A stretch of DNA of 64,000 bases, taken from positions 310,001 to 374,000 of the IMG/VR virus record IMGVR_UViG_3300034072_000758, one strand, 5' to 3'. Below the pieces are notes generated by a model. It saw only the letters and a program-made list of their open reading frames with translations. It did not search any database and had not been told where the DNA came from. Made by a program: the position numbers and the translations under genes. This document shows positions 10,189 through 41,767 of the stretch, piece after piece (position 1 is the first letter of the stretch; each line of letters begins with the position of its first letter).

Positions 10189-10434
10189 ATGAAGCTTTTT
10201 GAATTTGAAAAAGAAGATTTGGAAACAGCTTATTACGATCCAGAGAATGACGAAATCAATAAGCGTCACTTCGATGACACACGCAAGCCTAAATTGACCC
10301 TGCGTGATTTGAATAAGCTGAAAAAACTAAAGGCCGTCAAGAAGTTCGAAGCTCTTAAGCGTCAGGACTTGATCTCTGCTATGTATGGAAGCGCTGGTGG
10401 AGGCGATGATGGCGGTGGTGGAGCACCGTTCTAA
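10189..10434 (+). CDS. Small portal-adjacent head protein
   Basis: ORF coupled to portal; MKLFE N-terminus; DTRKPKLTL. Confidence 0.7.
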   Translation: MKLFEFEKEDLETAYYDPENDEINKRHFDDTRKPKLTLRDLNKLKKLKAVKKFEALKRQDLISAMYGSAGGGDDGGGGAPF

Positions 10435-11759
10435 TGACAATTCTTAATGAAGCCGTAAGTTTTTACTCTTCGTTGAAGGGTTCATTAGCATATGCTAAAT
10501 CGGGGAACAACTATCCGGTTGTAATGATCGCACGAGACAACGCGAAGATTGAAGATTCTAGTGATTTGGTGTTGGTAAAAATCGGTCCTAAAAAACTGAA
10601 TAGTTTATATGATCAATTTAATAGAAAGCAATTAAGCTGGAACTCAACTGAACCGAACGTGTTTGCTGGTTGGGATAACGACCGTCTGACGGAATTTTAT
10701 AACAATTTTATTAGATTTGCTCGTTATCCAACTTATTTACATAACATGACAGACGTAAAAGAATATCTTGACACTATTTCAAAGTATTCAGATACTATCG
10801 GCGACGTGGCCGAAGTAATCAAATTCTCGTCTCCAAAAGAACTTGCGAAGTATTTGATCCTCAAGCAAAAGAATTTCGATCCATATCATATAAAATTGAT
10901 TACCGGAGTTAGCCTTGAGAACGAAGATGACACCGATCTGAATTTCGTTACGGTGGGAAATACCCAAATTGTATTCCCAGATAACATGCGTGGCAAGAAG
11001 CAGAAAGAAATCATCGATCTCGTAAATGCGACCGATAAAGTTTTCGCACTTCATGGTATGTCATATTTGACAAATATCAAGATGTTCGTAAAGCCTATTC
11101 AAGAAAAGTGGTCCGGGTTATATTATTTGGATTCCAAGATAATTGCCATCAATACTTCGGCCCGTGCTTCGAAATCAGCGCTACACACTATGGTCCATGA
11201 GATCGGACACAAGTATTATTATGAGTTCATGTCTATGGAAAAGAAACGTGAGGTAGTTTTCAAATACATGAGCTTAATTAAGAGTTACAAAAAACCAGAG
11301 CCGAAAGAAAAAGATCACAGTGCTCTTTATCAATCCATTTGGGATCAATTTTCGGTTGGCGATGAACTTACTTTTGTCGGGGTGGGGAGAACTGGTAATT
11401 TTAACCCGTATGAGATCATATCCATTACCACGAATGAAATGAAGTTCGCATCGAAGGAGAAATCACCAAGAGGTAAACCTTGGGTCACCGGTCATTTTGA
11501 ACTGAAAAACATGGTATGGGTTGCTAGAAATTATTTGCTGAATGGAAAACAAATAGAGTACGAAGCCCCAAAGGCAGATGATCGACCAAGAACCGATGAT
11601 GGATTTGGTTTGAGGTATATCAATGACGGTTGGTTTCCAACCGCGTATTCGGCGACTTCACCGGAAGAATGGTTTGCTGAATGCTGGGCCTTTTACCTTC
11701 TGGGGCAGATCGAGTTCGAACCGCTCAAAGAGTTTTTCGAGGGTATCATCAAACAATAA
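10434..11759 (+). CDS. Zincin-like metallopeptidase, probably head-associated
   Basis: HEIGH (HExxH) plus distal YSATSPEEWFAE motif. Confidence 0.7.
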   Translation: MTILNEAVSFYSSLKGSLAYAKSGNNYPVVMIARDNAKIEDSSDLVLVKIGPKKLNSLYDQFNRKQLSWNSTEPNVFAGWDNDRLTEFYNNFIRFARYPTYLHNMTDVKEYLDTISKYSDTIGDVAEVIKFSSPKELAKYLILKQKNFDPYHIKLITGVSLENEDDTDLNFVTVGNTQIVFPDNMRGKKQKEIIDLVNATDKVFALHGMSYLTNIKMFVKPIQEKWSGLYYLDSKIIAINTSARASKSALHTMVHEIGHKYYYEFMSMEKKREVVFKYMSLIKSYKKPEPKEKDHSALYQSIWDQFSVGDELTFVGVGRTGNFNPYEIISITTNEMKFASKEKSPRGKPWVTGHFELKNMVWVARNYLLNGKQIEYEAPKADDRPRTDDGFGLRYINDGWFPTAYSATSPEEWFAECWAFYLLGQIEFEPLKEFFEGIIKQ

Positions 11760-11793
11760 AAAAGACCGGTGCTTTCGCATCGGTCTTTTTTTA
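11758..11793. terminator. Bidirectional intrinsic terminator
   Basis: AAAAAAGACCGGTGC-TTTC-GCATCGGTCTTTTTT. Confidence 0.85.
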
Positions 11794-11794
11794 T

Positions 11795-12630
11795 GAAACC
11801 CTGAGACTAGAGGCTTCGTAACCGTCTTTCGCATGGATTATGATCCGCTTGCGGCGAACTTTCCCAGCTTATCCACGATACCCTTGCGGTATATCGTATC
11901 GGCTAATGTCGCAACTTATAGAGCGCTTGCTGCGGCGCTTACCCACGTGACTTACTCGGCACTTCCCAAATCGCCGAAACCCGCTAAGGTTCCATTTGGA
12001 CAGCATGACCCGTCCTACGACTCTTCCTTTACCAACACATCCGAGCTTTGCGGCCCATCAGTGACCCGATTCCTTGCGGTCAGGTGTTAGACATTTTGTA
12101 GTCACGCAGAGAGGTAGACTTTGCGTTTTTAATTCGAAGCAGGAATTGAACCTGCGACATATGGTATGGAAAACCATTGCTCTACCAAACTGAGCTATTC
12201 GCAACTTACGAAGACGTGCCACCTCTGTTGCTTCATGGCTTTCACCACAAAATACAACACGCCTAGTACCTTTCTCACCGCTAAGTGATACTCAATCTTG
12301 ATACAGGACCGAAACCCCACATCAATCCTAACCGCCCTTGGCCGCTAAACCTCGAACTAATTAGATACCCGTTAAATATCACGCGGGAATGGTTTGCGTG
12401 TTTGGCAGGGCTTGCGGACCCCTTTATGCTACTCCATGCTTTCACAGAGGAAGCAACACTACCACCTTTCGGTGACCAAACCCATTCATCGCGTTAGTTC
12501 CTATCGTTTGGCAATAGAAACGTCTCTCGACTATTTCGGGCTTGCTTGGTTATACTGTATTGCTACAGCGGGACTATGTAAGCTTCATCCCTTTCAGCTA
12601 GTTGCCTAGCTTTATCGTCCCAAGCGACAA
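11795..12630 (-). ncRNA. Large structured ncRNA of about 835 nt, probably GOLLD RNA
   Basis: No credible ORF; own TTGACT-N17-TATATT promoter (12664-12636) and terminator; many GCAA/GAAA/GAGA-capped hairpins on the minus strand; embedded tRNA-like domain. GOLLD assignment rests on size, architecture and recalled motifs, not a covariance-model search. Confidence 0.7.
12132..12204 (-). tRNA. tRNA-Gly(TCC)-like domain embedded in the large ncRNA, with degenerate acceptor stem
   Basis: D arm GCTC-AGTTTGGTA-GAGC, anticodon arm ATGGT-TTTCCAT-ACCAT, T arm GCAGG-TTCAATT-CCTGC; only 4 bp of acceptor stem, no CCA. Confidence 0.7.
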
Positions 12631-12872
12631 ATGTGAATATATATAAGTTGGATTCTGTAGTCAACATAAAAAGAATTATTTTTGAACTTTTTTTGAAGTT
12701 ATCCACAGGTTCTCAAATTCCACAGTATTGATGTATAAATCGCATTTTTACGGATTTTTATATAGTATTCGGTCATTTTTTCAGAAAAATAACAGTTTAA
12801 ATCATAAAAACCATTCTAAATGCTAAATAATATCGATACGCTTTACCCTAAATTATCAAAGGAGATTTTTTG

Positions 12873-13823
12873 ATGCGTTCGATTCTTGAAGAAGCTCTCG
12901 CAGCTATTATTGAAAACGACGACGAAAGAGCCGCGCAACTCTTGCACAAATTCATTGTTGCTCGCTCTCGTCAAATCCACGAGTCGTTTAGACAAGGCGA
13001 TGACTTCGCTTTGGAAGAAAACGACATGTCCGACGACATGTACTCGGAAATCGATCTGGCCAGCCTGTCGGAAGATGATGAAGACACACTAGATGGTGCT
13101 GCTGATGACGTAGCTGCTGATCTGGGTGGTGAAGAAGAAGTTGATGATGCCGATGATTTCGGTGGCGATGATGCTGCTGGTCTGGGTGGTGAAGAAGAAG
13201 TTGATGGCGATCTTGACGCCGATATGGATGCTGACACCGGAGAAACAACACTGGACGACATCGCTGATCGTCTGGACGCCATCGAAGACCGTGAAGACGA
13301 TCTTGATGCGCAGATCGCCAAGCTGATCGCTTCGCTGGATGACGGCGAGGAAGAAGCCGGTGAAGAAGAAGAAGTCGCCGACGACACCGAGTTCGATGCC
13401 GACGAAGCTGGTCTGGATGACGCTGGTGAAGAAGAAGATTCCTTGGAAATCAAGGACGATATGGCTGACGACGAAGAAATGAAAGAAAGCGTCTTGGACG
13501 AAGACTTTGATGACCTCGCCGAATCCATCGTTGACGAACTCAAGAAGGTAATGGTTGACAACACCGAAGGCCGCACAACAGACGGCAAGAAGGTAGCTGT
13601 AAACGTAAAATCGCCGGGTAAGGTTGGTTACGACTTGTCGAAGGGTCAAGCTAAGGCCGAAGGTACTGAGCAAGGTGGTAAGAAGACATCCACCAACACA
13701 AAGTCCACACTGCCTCAGAAGGACGTAAAGGCTCGTCAAGGTGGCGCACCTACAAAGGTTGACACCAAGAAGAAGACCGATTTCGCAAAAGAAAAGGCCC
13801 CAGAAGTCAAGAAGCAGAAGTAA
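12873..13823 (+). CDS. Highly acidic prohead core-like protein
   Basis: Asp/Glu-rich with basic tail, internal LGGEEEVD duplication, late promoter, directly upstream of the prohead protease. Confidence 0.65.
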   Translation: MRSILEEALAAIIENDDERAAQLLHKFIVARSRQIHESFRQGDDFALEENDMSDDMYSEIDLASLSEDDEDTLDGAADDVAADLGGEEEVDDADDFGGDDAAGLGGEEEVDGDLDADMDADTGETTLDDIADRLDAIEDREDDLDAQIAKLIASLDDGEEEAGEEEEVADDTEFDADEAGLDDAGEEEDSLEIKDDMADDEEMKESVLDEDFDDLAESIVDELKKVMVDNTEGRTTDGKKVAVNVKSPGKVGYDLSKGQAKAEGTEQGGKKTSTNTKSTLPQKDVKARQGGAPTKVDTKKKTDFAKEKAPEVKKQK

Positions 13824-22962: not shown

Positions 22963-23292
22963 TCACTGTTTGACGACTGTGTAATAGGCTTGGTAAGACG
23001 GGAGTTCGACTCTCCCCGCCTCCACCATTGAATACATTAGTTGCTAGGTAGCCCCTAGTACGGAATATAGGATTGATCATCCTTAGCAGGTTCGAATCCT
23101 GCCCGAATGTGTTCTATTATGGGGGCGTTTTGGTTTCGATTATCGGCTGACGGACAGGAATAGGTGACGGTAAGAAACGACCGACCAATCAGTTCAAATT
23201 CATACTTGCCAACGACAACGTTGACATGAAGGACATGGCGCTCGCCGCCTAATCCATTCGGGGCTTGAGAGAGCCTAGCAACAGAATCTCTC
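22963..23292 (+). ncRNA. ssrA: Circularly permuted two-piece tmRNA (alphaproteobacterial type), tag ANDNVDMKDMALAA
   Basis: Acceptor piece ends GACGGGAGTTCGACTCTCCCCGCCTCCACCA (23027); coding piece starts GGGGGCG (23121) with G3.U70; tag 23208-23252; GGGC..GAGAGA-GCCT-AGCAACAGAA-TCTCTC pseudoknot; TTGACA and TATAAATA promoter at 22926-22957. Confidence 0.93.
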
Positions 23293-41586: not shown

Positions 41587-41587
41587 G

Positions 41588-41662
41588 TGGACTATGATGG
41601 AATCGAACCATCGCTATCGTTGAGTTACAACGACGACCTATCCTTTACAGGTCTGATAGCCC
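41588..41662 (-). tRNA. Atypical tRNA-like RNA: Ala-type acceptor (G3.U70, A73) with nominal AAC anticodon
   Basis: GGGCTAT/ATAGTCC-A; 5-bp D stem GACCT/AGGTC; TCGTT-GTAACTC-AACGA; canonical T arm. Confidence 0.7.
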
Positions 41663-41673
41663 TTAATTTTAAT

Positions 41674-41762
41674 TGGGGGACGGGTGGGATTCGAACCCAC
41701 GGAACCTTCTACAAGACCCTCCCGCGTCAATCGGGACACCTTAAGCCACTCAGTCACCGTCC
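41674..41762 (-). tRNA. Atypical tRNA-Ser(TGA)-like gene (6-bp acceptor, C discriminator, CCA)
   Basis: GGACGG/CCGTCC-C-CCA; TCCCG-ATTGACG-CGGGA; long variable arm. Confidence 0.65.
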
Positions 41763-41767
41763 ATCAA

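What the first reader, a model, noticed from the sequence alone, without database searches (positions are those of the whole stretch)
11795..12664. GOLLD-like giant ncRNA with an internal non-chargeable tRNA-Gly(UCC) domain, inserted antisense in the head gene cluster
Seen: its own promoter and terminator, about 835 nt of dense tetraloop hairpins, and a tRNA with intact D, anticodon and T arms but a broken acceptor stem. Established: GOLLD RNAs are roughly 800-nt phage-associated RNAs of unknown function that can carry tRNAs in variable regions. Inference: the tRNA fold is displayed rather than excised, possibly as bait for tRNA-targeting enzymes, which fits the translation-defence theme of this window.
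Basis: partly seen in the sequence, partly recalled or inferred. Interest (0 to 1): 0.65.

Follow-up and report, generated by a model that had tools for sequence, protein, structure and literature searches.

The report
GOLLD RNA with built-in tRNA-like module
This is a phage copy of GOLLD, a known giant cage-forming non-coding RNA, carrying a tRNA-shaped module that seems to stay in the RNA rather than serve as a working tRNA; it is a good new example of a known kind, not a new class.

Summary
Window 11758-12629 (minus strand) is a roughly 870-nt non-coding RNA gene. It has a sigma-70-like promoter and a bidirectional terminator, and it lies antisense between T4-like head genes of a 517-kb jumbo phage.

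It matches Rfam GOLLD over the whole model (144.4 bits, E 5e-40; 5.6 bits under the curated cut-off). Four related alphaproteobacterial phages carry alignable copies that pass the cut-off.

A tRNA-Gly(UCC)-like element (12131-12204) sits in the J13/15 linker, a position where embedded tRNAs are already described in the literature.

- **Arms and acceptor stem:** its D, anticodon and T arms and elbow nucleotides are intact. The top of its acceptor stem is mismatched (5 of 7 pairs) and lacks the G1-C72/C2-G71/G3-C70 pairs of the phage's two free tRNA-Gly genes.
- **Relatives:** across 42 related GOLLD-embedded modules the three top acceptor pairs form in only 55-60%. Anticodons differ widely, and some modules are impossible as decoding tRNAs.
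- **Expression:** contigs from three metatranscriptomes and one library only guessed to be RNA cover only 11813-12616. They run straight through the tRNA and do not touch the flanking genes.

Verdict: a new member of a known kind. The bait or decoy function remains untested.

The parts
12636..12664 (-). Sigma-70-like promoter: -35 TTGACT at 12664-12659 and -10 TATATT at 12641-12636. The expected start is near 12629.
   Evidence: The consensus scan gives 10 of 12 matches and one search gives the coordinates. RNA-library contigs begin at 12610-12616.
11758..12629 (-). Predicted GOLLD RNA transcript, about 870 nt.
   Evidence: The bounds come from the promoter and terminator. Fold z = -4.7. RNA-library contigs of 794 and 804 nt lie wholly at 11821-12614 and 11813-12616, with none on the flanks.
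12268..12629 (-). Variable 5' domain, which is not part of the Rfam model.
   Evidence: It aligns in blocks with the 5' domains of Phosso, Cp1R7A-A1 and 13 metagenomic relatives. One shared block is GTTCGAGGTTTAGCGGCCAAGGGCG at 12357-12333.
12206..12267 (-). P13/P14 hairpin with an A-rich L14 loop (GGUGAAAGCC at 12246-12237). This is the start of the conserved 3' domain.
   Evidence: It corresponds to Rfam GOLLD model positions 1 to about 62. The stem has 9 bp closing a GAAA loop.
12131..12204 (-). tRNA-like module with anticodon UCC, sitting in the J13/15 linker.
   Evidence: Rfam tRNA scores 58.1 bits and ARAGORN calls it. The arms are perfect and the acceptor stem has 5 of 7 pairs.
12116..12130 (-). 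Conserved J13/15 motif AAAAACGCAAAGUCU. Its CGCAA (12125-12121) is complementary to UUGCG (12204-12200), the 5' strand of the tRNA acceptor stem.
   Evidence: The motif follows the Rfam consensus AAAGCAAAAGUCU. The alternative closing helix is 2.9-5.1 kcal/mol better than the acceptor stem. It forms in 17 of 38 relatives.
12100..12109 (-). J13/15 strand of the kissing loop (CUGCGUGACU).
   Evidence: It is 10 of 10 complementary to 11943-11952. The pairing covaries across relatives.
11943..11952 (-). L20 strand of the kissing loop (AGUCACGUGG).
   Evidence: In the env-38 cryo-EM structure this pairing is an intermolecular bridge (10.1101/2024.12.08.627333).
11798..12115 (-). Remainder of the conserved GOLLD 3' domain.
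   Evidence: It corresponds to Rfam GOLLD model positions of about 140 to 416.
11758..11792 (.). Bidirectional intrinsic terminator hairpin, shared with the convergent gene 10434-11759.
   Evidence: The sequence is shown and the coordinates. It appears as the last hairpin in the fold.

Best explanation
The locus is a GOLLD RNA gene of an Atu_ph07-like T4-superfamily jumbo phage. The phage genome is 516,805 bp with terminal repeats.

The RNA is made from its own promoter, antisense to the head module, as a discrete RNA of about 800-870 nt.

By homology with solved GOLLD RNAs, I infer that it assembles into a homo-oligomeric RNA cage through its conserved 3' domain. The J13/15-L20 kissing loop that bridges chains in the solved structure is retained here.

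The J13/15 linker points into the cage lumen in the solved structure. Here it carries a tRNA-shaped module. The L-shape of that module (D, anticodon and T arms and the elbow) is under selection. Its acceptor end is degenerate and its anticodon is free to drift.

The module is therefore most likely a permanently tethered tRNA mimic, not a tRNA precursor. One copy per chain would be held inside the cage.

The most likely role, by inference only, is to bind or sequester a factor that recognises tRNA shape during infection. Candidates are a host tRNA-cleaving defence nuclease, a tRNA-modifying enzyme, or a ribosomal site.

Shown here: the family membership, the anatomy, presence in RNA libraries as an uncut unit, and the non-canonical acceptor stem. 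Inferred: cage formation in this member, the lack of charging and excision, and the sequestering role.
For: **Family**
- Rfam GOLLD gives 144.4 bits, E 5e-40, over model positions 1-416.
- It is the only such match in the genome.
- Four phage homologues score 160-193 bits, each with a tRNA at the same place.
- The full-length sequences can be aligned.
- The kissing loop is 10 of 10 complementary. Across relatives, 36 of 48 have 8 of 8 complementary positions, against 8.3 +/- 2.1 after permutation.

**Expression**
- Contigs from metatranscriptomes of three studies, plus one probable RNA run, lie only on 11813-12616.
- Two of them (794 and 804 nt) span the whole RNA including the tRNA.
- None lies on the flanking genes, so the flanks serve as an internal control against DNA carry-over.

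**Not a working tRNA**
- The acceptor stem has U1.U72 and G3.A70 mismatches.
- The phage's free tRNA-Gly(UCC) and tRNA-Gly(GCC) both have G1-C72, C2-G71, G3-C70 and U73.
- In 42 unique embedded modules, pairs 1-72, 2-71 and 3-70 form in 57, 60 and 55%, while pairs 4-7 form in 93-100%. In 41 free tRNAs of this phage, read by the same parser, every pair forms in 95-100%.
- The modules carry eleven different anticodons. These include Ser and Leu anticodons on bodies without the long extra arm, and 5 of 42 modules have anticodon loops of abnormal length.
- Close relatives share the anticodon stem AUGGU/ACCAU but have the loops UUUCCAU, UUCAGGA and CGUCUAA.

**L-shape under selection**
- The three arms are 98-100% paired, with 9 pairs changed on both sides.
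- G18G19 is present in 41 of 42 modules and A14 in 42 of 42.

**Literature**
- The linker lies inside the cage and sometimes carries tRNAs (10.1101/2024.12.08.627333).
- The 'inhibited storage' idea is in PMC12990946.
- No excised product was detected from a mycobacterial GOLLD pseudo-tRNA (PMC6582537).
Against: - The Rfam score is 5.6 bits under the curated gathering score.
- The expression evidence comes from assembled contigs, not reads. It cannot show ends, strand or abundance, and it cannot exclude that a fraction of the RNA is processed. One low-depth contig ends 6 nt beyond the 3' end of the tRNA.
- 8 of 42 related modules have a full 7-bp acceptor stem, so some could still be processed.
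- GOLLD members with a plain hairpin in place of the tRNA exist, so the module is not essential to the family.
- No binding partner is known.
- Cage formation has not been shown for this subgroup.
Confidence: 0.7

Rival explanations
1. Pro-tRNA or 'inhibited storage'. In this reading the module is a real tRNA-Gly(UCC) stored inside the GOLLD transcript or cage. RNase P and RNase Z release it when the cage opens, supplying the phage with a tRNA.
For: - The tRNA score is in the middle of the range of the window's free tRNAs (58.1 bits against 48-75).
- All tertiary-fold nucleotides are canonical, as are U33 and A37.
- 8 of 42 related modules have a 7 of 7 acceptor stem.
- The storage idea has been proposed in PMC12990946.
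- One low-depth RNA contig ends 6 nt after the tRNA.
Against: - The top of the acceptor stem is mismatched and lacks the Gly identity pairs that both free tRNA-Gly genes of this phage have.
- A canonical free tRNA-Gly(UCC) already exists.
- Anticodons in close relatives are unrelated. Some modules are class II identities without the long arm, and some have loops of the wrong size.
- Contigs of 794 and 804 nt from RNA libraries are uncut.
- No excised product was seen in Mycobacterium aubagnense (PMC6582537).
Confidence: 0.12
2. Decaying passenger. A tRNA gene was captured into the tolerant linker, because GOLLD genes usually sit in tRNA arrays. It is now a neutral remnant with no role of its own.
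For: - The linker is the variable region of the family.
- Some relatives carry a simple hairpin instead (L008, L016, L040 and others).
- The acceptor stem and anticodon look relaxed.
- GOLLD lies inside tRNA arrays in Cp1R7A-A1, DSS3_MAL1 and MD18.
Against: - The three arms stay 98-100% paired through compensatory changes.
- The elbow nucleotides are nearly invariant in 42 diverged modules.
- Linker length is held at 83-90 nt.
- The modules share a body lineage that differs from the phage's own tRNAs: the T loop is UUCAA in 34 of 42 modules, against UUCGA in 35 of 41 free tRNAs.

A neutral remnant would lose the fold.
Confidence: 0.13
3. Not an RNA gene. In this reading the stretch is an intergenic spacer or hides a small protein gene, and the matches arise by chance.
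For: ORFs of 40-85 aa can be drawn on both strands.
Against: - The covariance-model E-value is 5e-40.
- Structured homologues exist in more than 60 phage loci.
- The kissing loop covaries.
- RNA-library contigs are confined to the element.
Confidence: 0.01

Closest known systems
GOLLD RNA (Rfam RF02032; cryo-EM structures of env-38, a 14-mer, and Streptococcus agalactiae GOLLD, a 12-mer)
   Same: - The full 3' domain is present: the P13/P14 hairpin with an A-rich loop, the J13/15 motif, the J13/15-L20 kissing loop and the terminal UCUCAG hairpin.
- The 5' domain is variable.
- The RNA is phage-encoded and more than 800 nt long.
   Different: - The score is 5.6 bits under Rfam's cut-off.
- The gene sits in a head-gene module of a 517-kb jumbo phage rather than in a tRNA array.
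- Oligomer formation has not been shown for this member.
Mycobacterial GOLLD with an embedded tRNA-Phe or pseudo-tRNA in J13/15 (PMC6582537; PMC12990946, citing Morgado 2020)
   Same: - A tRNA-like element lies in the same linker.
- It was judged a pseudo-tRNA, and no excised product was detected.
   Different: - The host group is different: an alphaproteobacterial type of phage.
- The anticodon is different.
- Here the degenerate acceptor stem is documented across 42 modules, and an alternative helix with the J13/15 motif is predicted.
ROOL RNA
   Same: It is a phage-associated large RNA that forms a cage with a disordered internal linker, and it often lies near tRNAs.
   Different: Its sequence and fold are unrelated, and there was no match here.
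YrlA / bacterial Y RNA-like tRNA mimics (RF02553)
   Same: A non-coding RNA that carries a tRNA-like D/T-arm domain that is not aminoacylated. There is a weak match at 12148-12248 (30.5 bits).
   Different: The match is far below the cut-off of 69 bits. There is no Ro-binding stem. The resemblance is only the shared tRNA-like arms.
tmRNA tRNA-like domain and viral tRNA-like structures
   Same: A tRNA shape built into a larger RNA.
   Different: Those have a functional, chargeable acceptor end. This one has an internal, mismatched acceptor stem with no free 3' end.

Membership tests
GOLLD RNA (RF02032) | Significant full-length match to the covariance model of the conserved 3' domain | tested here: met
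   144.4 bits, E 5.1e-40, model positions 1-416 of 416, at 11798-12267 on the minus strand. The genome search gives the same result.
GOLLD RNA (RF02032) | Reaches Rfam's curated gathering score of 150 bits (an operational cut-off, not a structural feature) | tested here: not met
   144.4 against 150 bits, so the default scan missed it. Four homologues that align with it over their full length score 160-193 bits.
GOLLD RNA (RF02032) | P13/P14 hairpin with an A-rich L14 loop, followed by a variable linker and the conserved AAAGCAAAAGUCU-type motif | tested here: met
   The hairpin is at 12206-12267 with loop GUGAAAG. The motif AAAAACGCAAAGUCU is at 12116-12130.
GOLLD RNA (RF02032) | Complementarity between J13/15 and L20 (pseudoknot or kissing loop) | tested here: met
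   Positions 12100-12109 pair with 11943-11952 at 10 of 10 positions. In relatives, 36 of 48 have 8 of 8 with different sequences, against 8.3 +/- 2.1 after permutation.
GOLLD RNA (RF02032) | Large, less conserved 5' domain, giving a total length near or above 800 nt | tested here: met
   About 360 nt lie upstream of P13. This part aligns in blocks with relatives. RNA contigs reach 12616.
GOLLD RNA (RF02032) | Phage or prophage location, often near tRNA genes | tested here: met
   The genome is a 516,805-bp virus record with terminal repeats, carries T4-like head genes and holds 57 tRNA genes. The nearest tRNA array is 23 kb away, so 'near tRNAs' holds only loosely.
GOLLD RNA (RF02032) | Homo-oligomeric cage assembly | not testable with these tools
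   This is inferred only from the retained bridge elements. The structures are described in 10.1101/2024.12.08.627333 and PMC12990946.
Functional tRNA-Gly | Cloverleaf with D, anticodon and T arms and the tertiary-fold nucleotides | tested here: met
   Rfam tRNA scores 58.1 bits (cut-off 29), ARAGORN calls it, and U8, A14, G18G19, U54U55C56 and A58 are present.
Functional tRNA-Gly | Continuous 7-bp acceptor stem | tested here: not met
   There are U1.U72 and G3.A70 mismatches. The acceptor stem is absent from the minimum-energy fold. By contrast, 37 of 41 free tRNAs of the same phage have 7 of 7 pairs.
Functional tRNA-Gly | Bacterial glycine identity set: G1-C72, C2-G71, G3-C70, U73, C35 and C36 (from established knowledge of tRNA identity) | tested here: not met
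   Only U73, C35 and C36 are present. Both free tRNA-Gly genes of the phage have the full set.
Functional tRNA-Gly | Released from its precursor as an RNA of about 75 nt | tested here: inconclusive
   RNA-library contigs run through it uncut, but contigs cannot exclude partial processing.

The most novel reading that the evidence does not exclude
In one large subgroup of phage GOLLD RNAs, common in jumbo phages, the tRNA-like module is a standard built-in part. Its acceptor end is closed off, in the window's type by pairing with the conserved J13/15 motif, and its anticodon loop evolves freely.

The cage would then hold 10-14 tethered tRNA decoys that trap host tRNA-targeting defence nucleases or other tRNA-binding factors. 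That would give GOLLD its first function: an RNA-only counter-defence organelle.
Probability: 0.15. Interest if true: 0.8.

Novelty: new member of a known kind. Interest (0 to 1): 0.4.

Why it matters
GOLLD is one of the largest bacterial and phage non-coding RNAs. Its cage structure is now solved, but its function is still unknown.

- **Range.** This locus extends the family to Atu_ph07-like jumbo phages. Of the GOLLD-bearing virus contigs found here, 15 exceed 200 kb, and no held paper links GOLLD with jumbo phages.
- **Detection.** Rfam's default cut-off misses this copy.
- **A testable constraint.** In this subgroup the linker tRNA keeps its L-shape but not its acceptor end or anticodon. 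It also appears uncut in RNA libraries from several environments. This favours 'tethered tRNA mimic' over 'stored tRNA'.
- **Where to test.** Cultivable relatives could settle it: Sinorhizobium phage Phosso, Mesorhizobium phage Cp1R7A-A1 and Phaeobacter phage MD18.

Tried and rejected
- **Default Rfam scan.** The scan at gathering threshold gave no GOLLD match. Only the E-value scan of the region found it.
- **No close relative.** No relative was more than about 80% identical over the whole RNA in the phage records, IMG/VR or the metagenome contigs. Fine-scale covariation around the window's own sequence could therefore not be done. The near-identical copies seen in sequencing runs could only be laid, not fetched.
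- **5' domain structure.** MAFFT plus RNAalifold on the 5' domains of 15 relatives gave only 15 consensus pairs. The alignment is too poor, so no 5' domain structure is claimed.
- **Closing helix UUGCG/CGCAA.**
  - It is energetically preferred.
  - It is enriched against permutation at p about 0.004, without correction for relatedness.
  - On the 11-sequence alignment the helix is mostly invariant. Only one pair covaries, plus a coupled C/G insertion that may be a single event.
  - It is kept as a lead, not a finding.
- **Hybrid helix.** A helix with the top 3 pairs formed with the motif and the bottom 4 with the tRNA 3' strand scores worse (-15.1 kcal/mol).
- **Protein-coding reading.** Rejected: the ORFs are at most 85 aa.
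- **Synteny.** Atu_ph07, the phage with the closest portal, has no GOLLD. Phosso has its copy about 200 kb from its portal. The position in the head module is therefore not conserved.
- **Papers not held.** Weinberg 2009 and Morgado 2020 could not be read. Their content is cited only through papers that quote them.

Full report

Yes. Between the convergent + strand gene 10434-11759 and the + strand gene 12870-13823 lies about 1.1 kb with no ORF above 85 aa.

On the minus strand there is a promoter-like site, TTGACT-17-TATATT at 12664-12636. At 11758-11792 there is a G+C-rich hairpin flanked by A and T runs, which can terminate both strands.

The 873-nt minus-strand RNA folds at -300.8 kcal/mol, against -267.5 +/- 7.1 for shuffles, z = -4.7. 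It holds four GNRA hairpins with stems of at least 4 bp, where 0.8 is expected.

Rfam and ARAGORN both call a tRNA with anticodon UCC at 12131-12204 on the minus strand. Its D, anticodon and T arms are perfect. Its acceptor stem has U1.U72 and G3.A70 mismatches.

**2. What is it?**

The default Rfam scan of the window gave no GOLLD match. An E-value scan of the region gave GOLLD (RF02032) at 11798-12267 on the minus strand: 144.4 bits, E 5.1e-40, covering model positions 1-416 of 416. That is 5.6 bits below the curated cut-off of 150. It is the only such match in the genome.

The structural hallmarks are all present:
- the P13/P14 hairpin with an A-rich loop;
- the linker;
- the conserved motif AAAAACGCAAAGUCU;
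- the UCUCAG hairpin at the end;
- the J13/15-L20 complementarity, 10 of 10 here.

That last pairing covaries across relatives. 36 of 48 have 8 of 8 complementary positions with many different sequences, against 8.3 +/- 2.1 when partners are permuted. In the env-38 cryo-EM structure this pairing is an intermolecular bridge of the cage (10.1101/2024.12.08.627333).

A distant blastn search found four alphaproteobacterial phages: Sinorhizobium phage Phosso, Mesorhizobium phage Cp1R7A-A1, DSS3_MAL1 and Phaeobacter phage MD18. All four carry a GOLLD above the cut-off (160-193 bits) with a tRNA at the same linker position. They align with the window over the whole RNA, including blocks of the 5' domain.

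I therefore file it as a GOLLD RNA.

**3. Genome context**

The window is bases 310001-374000 of a 516,805-bp virus record with direct terminal repeats.

The neighbours on the + strand are:
- a T4 gp20-like portal (PF07230, E 5e-92);
- a weakly matching minor head protein;
- an unknown 317-aa protein;
- a gp21-like prohead protease (PF03420).

So 'antisense in the head gene cluster' is correct.

The portal is closest to Agrobacterium phage Atu_ph07 (45.5%) and Phosso (43.9%). Atu_ph07 has no GOLLD, and Phosso's copy lies about 200 kb from its portal. The element is therefore accessory, and its position is not conserved.

In Cp1R7A-A1, DSS3_MAL1 and MD18 the GOLLD sits inside tRNA arrays, in the latter two beside a tmRNA. 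Here the nearest tRNA array is 23 kb away.

**4. Is it expressed, and is the tRNA cut out?**

The stretch, or a near-identical copy, is held by 20 public runs from 11 studies. Seven of them are recorded as metatranscriptomes.

I laid the contigs of three metatranscriptomes (two soil, one plant) and one probable RNA run on 10600-13800.
- Contigs lie only on 11813-12616.
- One contig of 794 nt lies wholly at 11821-12614, and one of 804 nt at 11813-12616.
- A 411-nt contig lies at 11826-12233.
- Two error-free contigs lie at 12125-12415 and 12420-12610.
- Nothing lies on the flanking genes apart from short low-identity scraps.

The silent flanks argue against DNA carry-over. The contig limits fit the predicted start and the end of the GOLLD model. 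Four contigs bridge the whole tRNA.

This supports a discrete, stable RNA that retains the tRNA. The caveat is that contigs cannot show true ends, strand or level, and they cannot exclude partial processing. One low-depth contig ends 6 nt beyond the tRNA 3' end. I do not read that as processing.

**5. The tRNA-like module**

[quoted passage not shown] A Mycolicibacterium GOLLD carries a tRNA-Phe in J13/15, for which 'inhibited storage' has been suggested (PMC12990946). A pseudo-tRNA inside the M. aubagnense GOLLD gave no excised product (PMC6582537).

What I add is a survey. A pattern drawn only from the P13/P14 hairpin pulled 53 IMG/VR loci. A 5'-domain pattern pulled 12 more from viral and metagenome contigs.

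*Linker and anticodons*
- Among 48 unique linkers, most are 83-90 nt. They read as a conserved GUAGGUU, then a tRNA-like element, then the AAAA-GCAAAG motif. About eight carry a plain hairpin instead.
- ARAGORN's anticodon calls are scattered: Lys, Asn, Arg, Gln, Cys, Ile, Gly and AUG. They also include Ser and Leu on 72-74-nt bodies without the long arm, and several loops of abnormal size.

*Comparison with free tRNAs.* I read 42 unique embedded modules and 41 free class-I tRNAs of this same phage with one simple cloverleaf parser.

| Feature | Embedded modules (n = 42) | Free tRNAs (n = 41) |
|---|---|---|
| Acceptor pairs 1-72, 2-71, 3-70 formed | 57, 60, 55% | 98-100% |
| Acceptor pairs 4-69 to 7-66 formed | 93-100% | 95-100% |
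| Full 7 of 7 acceptor stem | 8 | 37 |
| T loop | UUCAA in 34 | UUCGA in 35 |
| Encoded CCA | 3 | 16 |

*Fold conservation*
- On an 11-sequence alignment of the window's own subtype, the D, anticodon and T stems are 98-100% paired, with nine pairs changed on both sides.
- G18G19 is present in 41 of 42 embedded modules and A14 in 42 of 42. The T-loop letters are partly imposed by my parser, so I do not count them.
- Close relatives share the window's anticodon stem but have unrelated loops.

*Redundancy in this genome*
- The genome has 57 tRNA genes, including a free tRNA-Gly(UCC) and a free tRNA-Gly(GCC).
- Both free genes have G1-C72, C2-G71, G3-C70 and U73. The embedded module has none of the three pairs, and its body is unrelated.
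- By the established identity rules for bacterial tRNA-Gly (my knowledge, not tested here), it should not be glycylated.

Together these results show selection for the tRNA L-shape, but not for decoding or for a free acceptor end.

**6. A lead: an alternative closing helix**

In the window the acceptor 5' strand UUGCG (12204-12200) is complementary to CGCAA (12125-12121) inside the conserved J13/15 motif.

- With the three arms fixed, this helix gives -21.0 kcal/mol. The canonical acceptor stem gives -15.9 to -18.1.
- Over 38 relatives folded in the same way, 17 pair the 5' flank with the downstream motif, 15 form the canonical acceptor stem and 6 do neither.
- The helix occurs as UUGCG/CGCAA, UUCGC/GCGAA and UUGCA/UGCAA.
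- Permuting the 3' motifs among sequences gives 7.1 +/- 2.1 five-pair helices, against 14 observed.
- On a proper alignment the helix is mostly invariant, and the changes may be few events.

It would explain the mismatched top of the acceptor stem, and it would bury the end of the module. It needs probing or a covariation test that corrects for phylogeny.

**7. How it most likely works**

Shown:
- it is a GOLLD RNA;
- it is present as a unit in RNA libraries;
- it carries an L-shaped but non-canonical tRNA module in the linker.

Inferred from the solved homologues: it forms a homo-oligomeric cage with one module per chain inside.

Inferred from the anatomy: the module is a tethered mimic that binds something recognising tRNA shape. 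The commonest anticodon loops in the subgroup are Asn GUU, Lys UUU and CUU, and Arg UCU. From my own knowledge these are classic targets of anticodon nucleases. However, the loops are one mutation apart and the sequences are related, so this is weak support.

Rivals:
- release as a working tRNA (about 0.12);
- a neutral remnant (about 0.13);
- not an RNA gene (refuted).

**8. Novelty and score**

This is a new member of a known family with a known type of insertion, so the headline is not new. The modest additions are:
- the occurrence in Atu_ph07-like and other jumbo phages (15 of the GOLLD contigs exceed 200 kb; no held paper links the two);
- the miss by the default Rfam cut-off;
- the survey evidence and RNA-library evidence that the linker tRNA is a retained mimic.

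Interest is 0.4.

Noticed in passing
window 22963-23252 (+): A permuted (two-piece, alphaproteobacterial type) tmRNA gene is encoded by the phage: 97.5 bits to tmRNA_permuted and 72.3 bits to alpha_tmRNA. DSS3_MAL1 and MD18 carry one right beside their GOLLD.
   Followed up: partly
genome G000 117291-117364 (outside the window): ARAGORN calls a tRNA with anticodon CUA, of the amber-suppressor type and labelled Pyl. It is one of 57 tRNA genes in the phage genome. I did not check whether the phage reads TAG as sense.
   Followed up: no
window 41587-41662 and 41675-41763 (-): ARAGORN calls tRNA-Val(aac) and a second tRNA-Ser(tga) here, but Rfam's tRNA model does not report them at its cut-off. 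They may be degenerate copies in the array.
   Followed up: no
window 12148-12248 (-): There is a weak match to YrlA, the bacterial Y RNA-like tRNA mimic (30.5 bits, cut-off 69). It is explained by the shared tRNA-like D and T arms and is not a membership.
   Followed up: yes
L008, L012, L040, L016, L021, L036, L045, L054 (linker after P13): These GOLLD relatives carry a short plain hairpin in the linker instead of a tRNA-like module. They are natural 'module-less' variants that would be useful as controls.
   Followed up: partly
L071 (Agrobacterium phage Atu_ph07, 162.1-164.6 kb of the record): The phage with the closest portal has no GOLLD anywhere. At the syntenic place in its head module it has a topoisomerase-like gene and three small minus-strand ORFs. 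This spot is therefore a variable insertion site in the group.
   Followed up: partly
window 12125 (contig end in run X12): An error-free metatranscriptome contig of 291 nt ends 6 nt beyond the 3' end of the tRNA-like module, and that run shows no contig on the 3' domain. The depth is only about 4. This is too thin to call a processing site.
   Followed up: no
sequencing runs X2-X9: Several runs labelled with single organisms (coded A-E) hold 50-59% of the sampled words of the element. Near relatives of this GOLLD may therefore occur in cultures or isolates, and not only in metagenomes.
   Followed up: no
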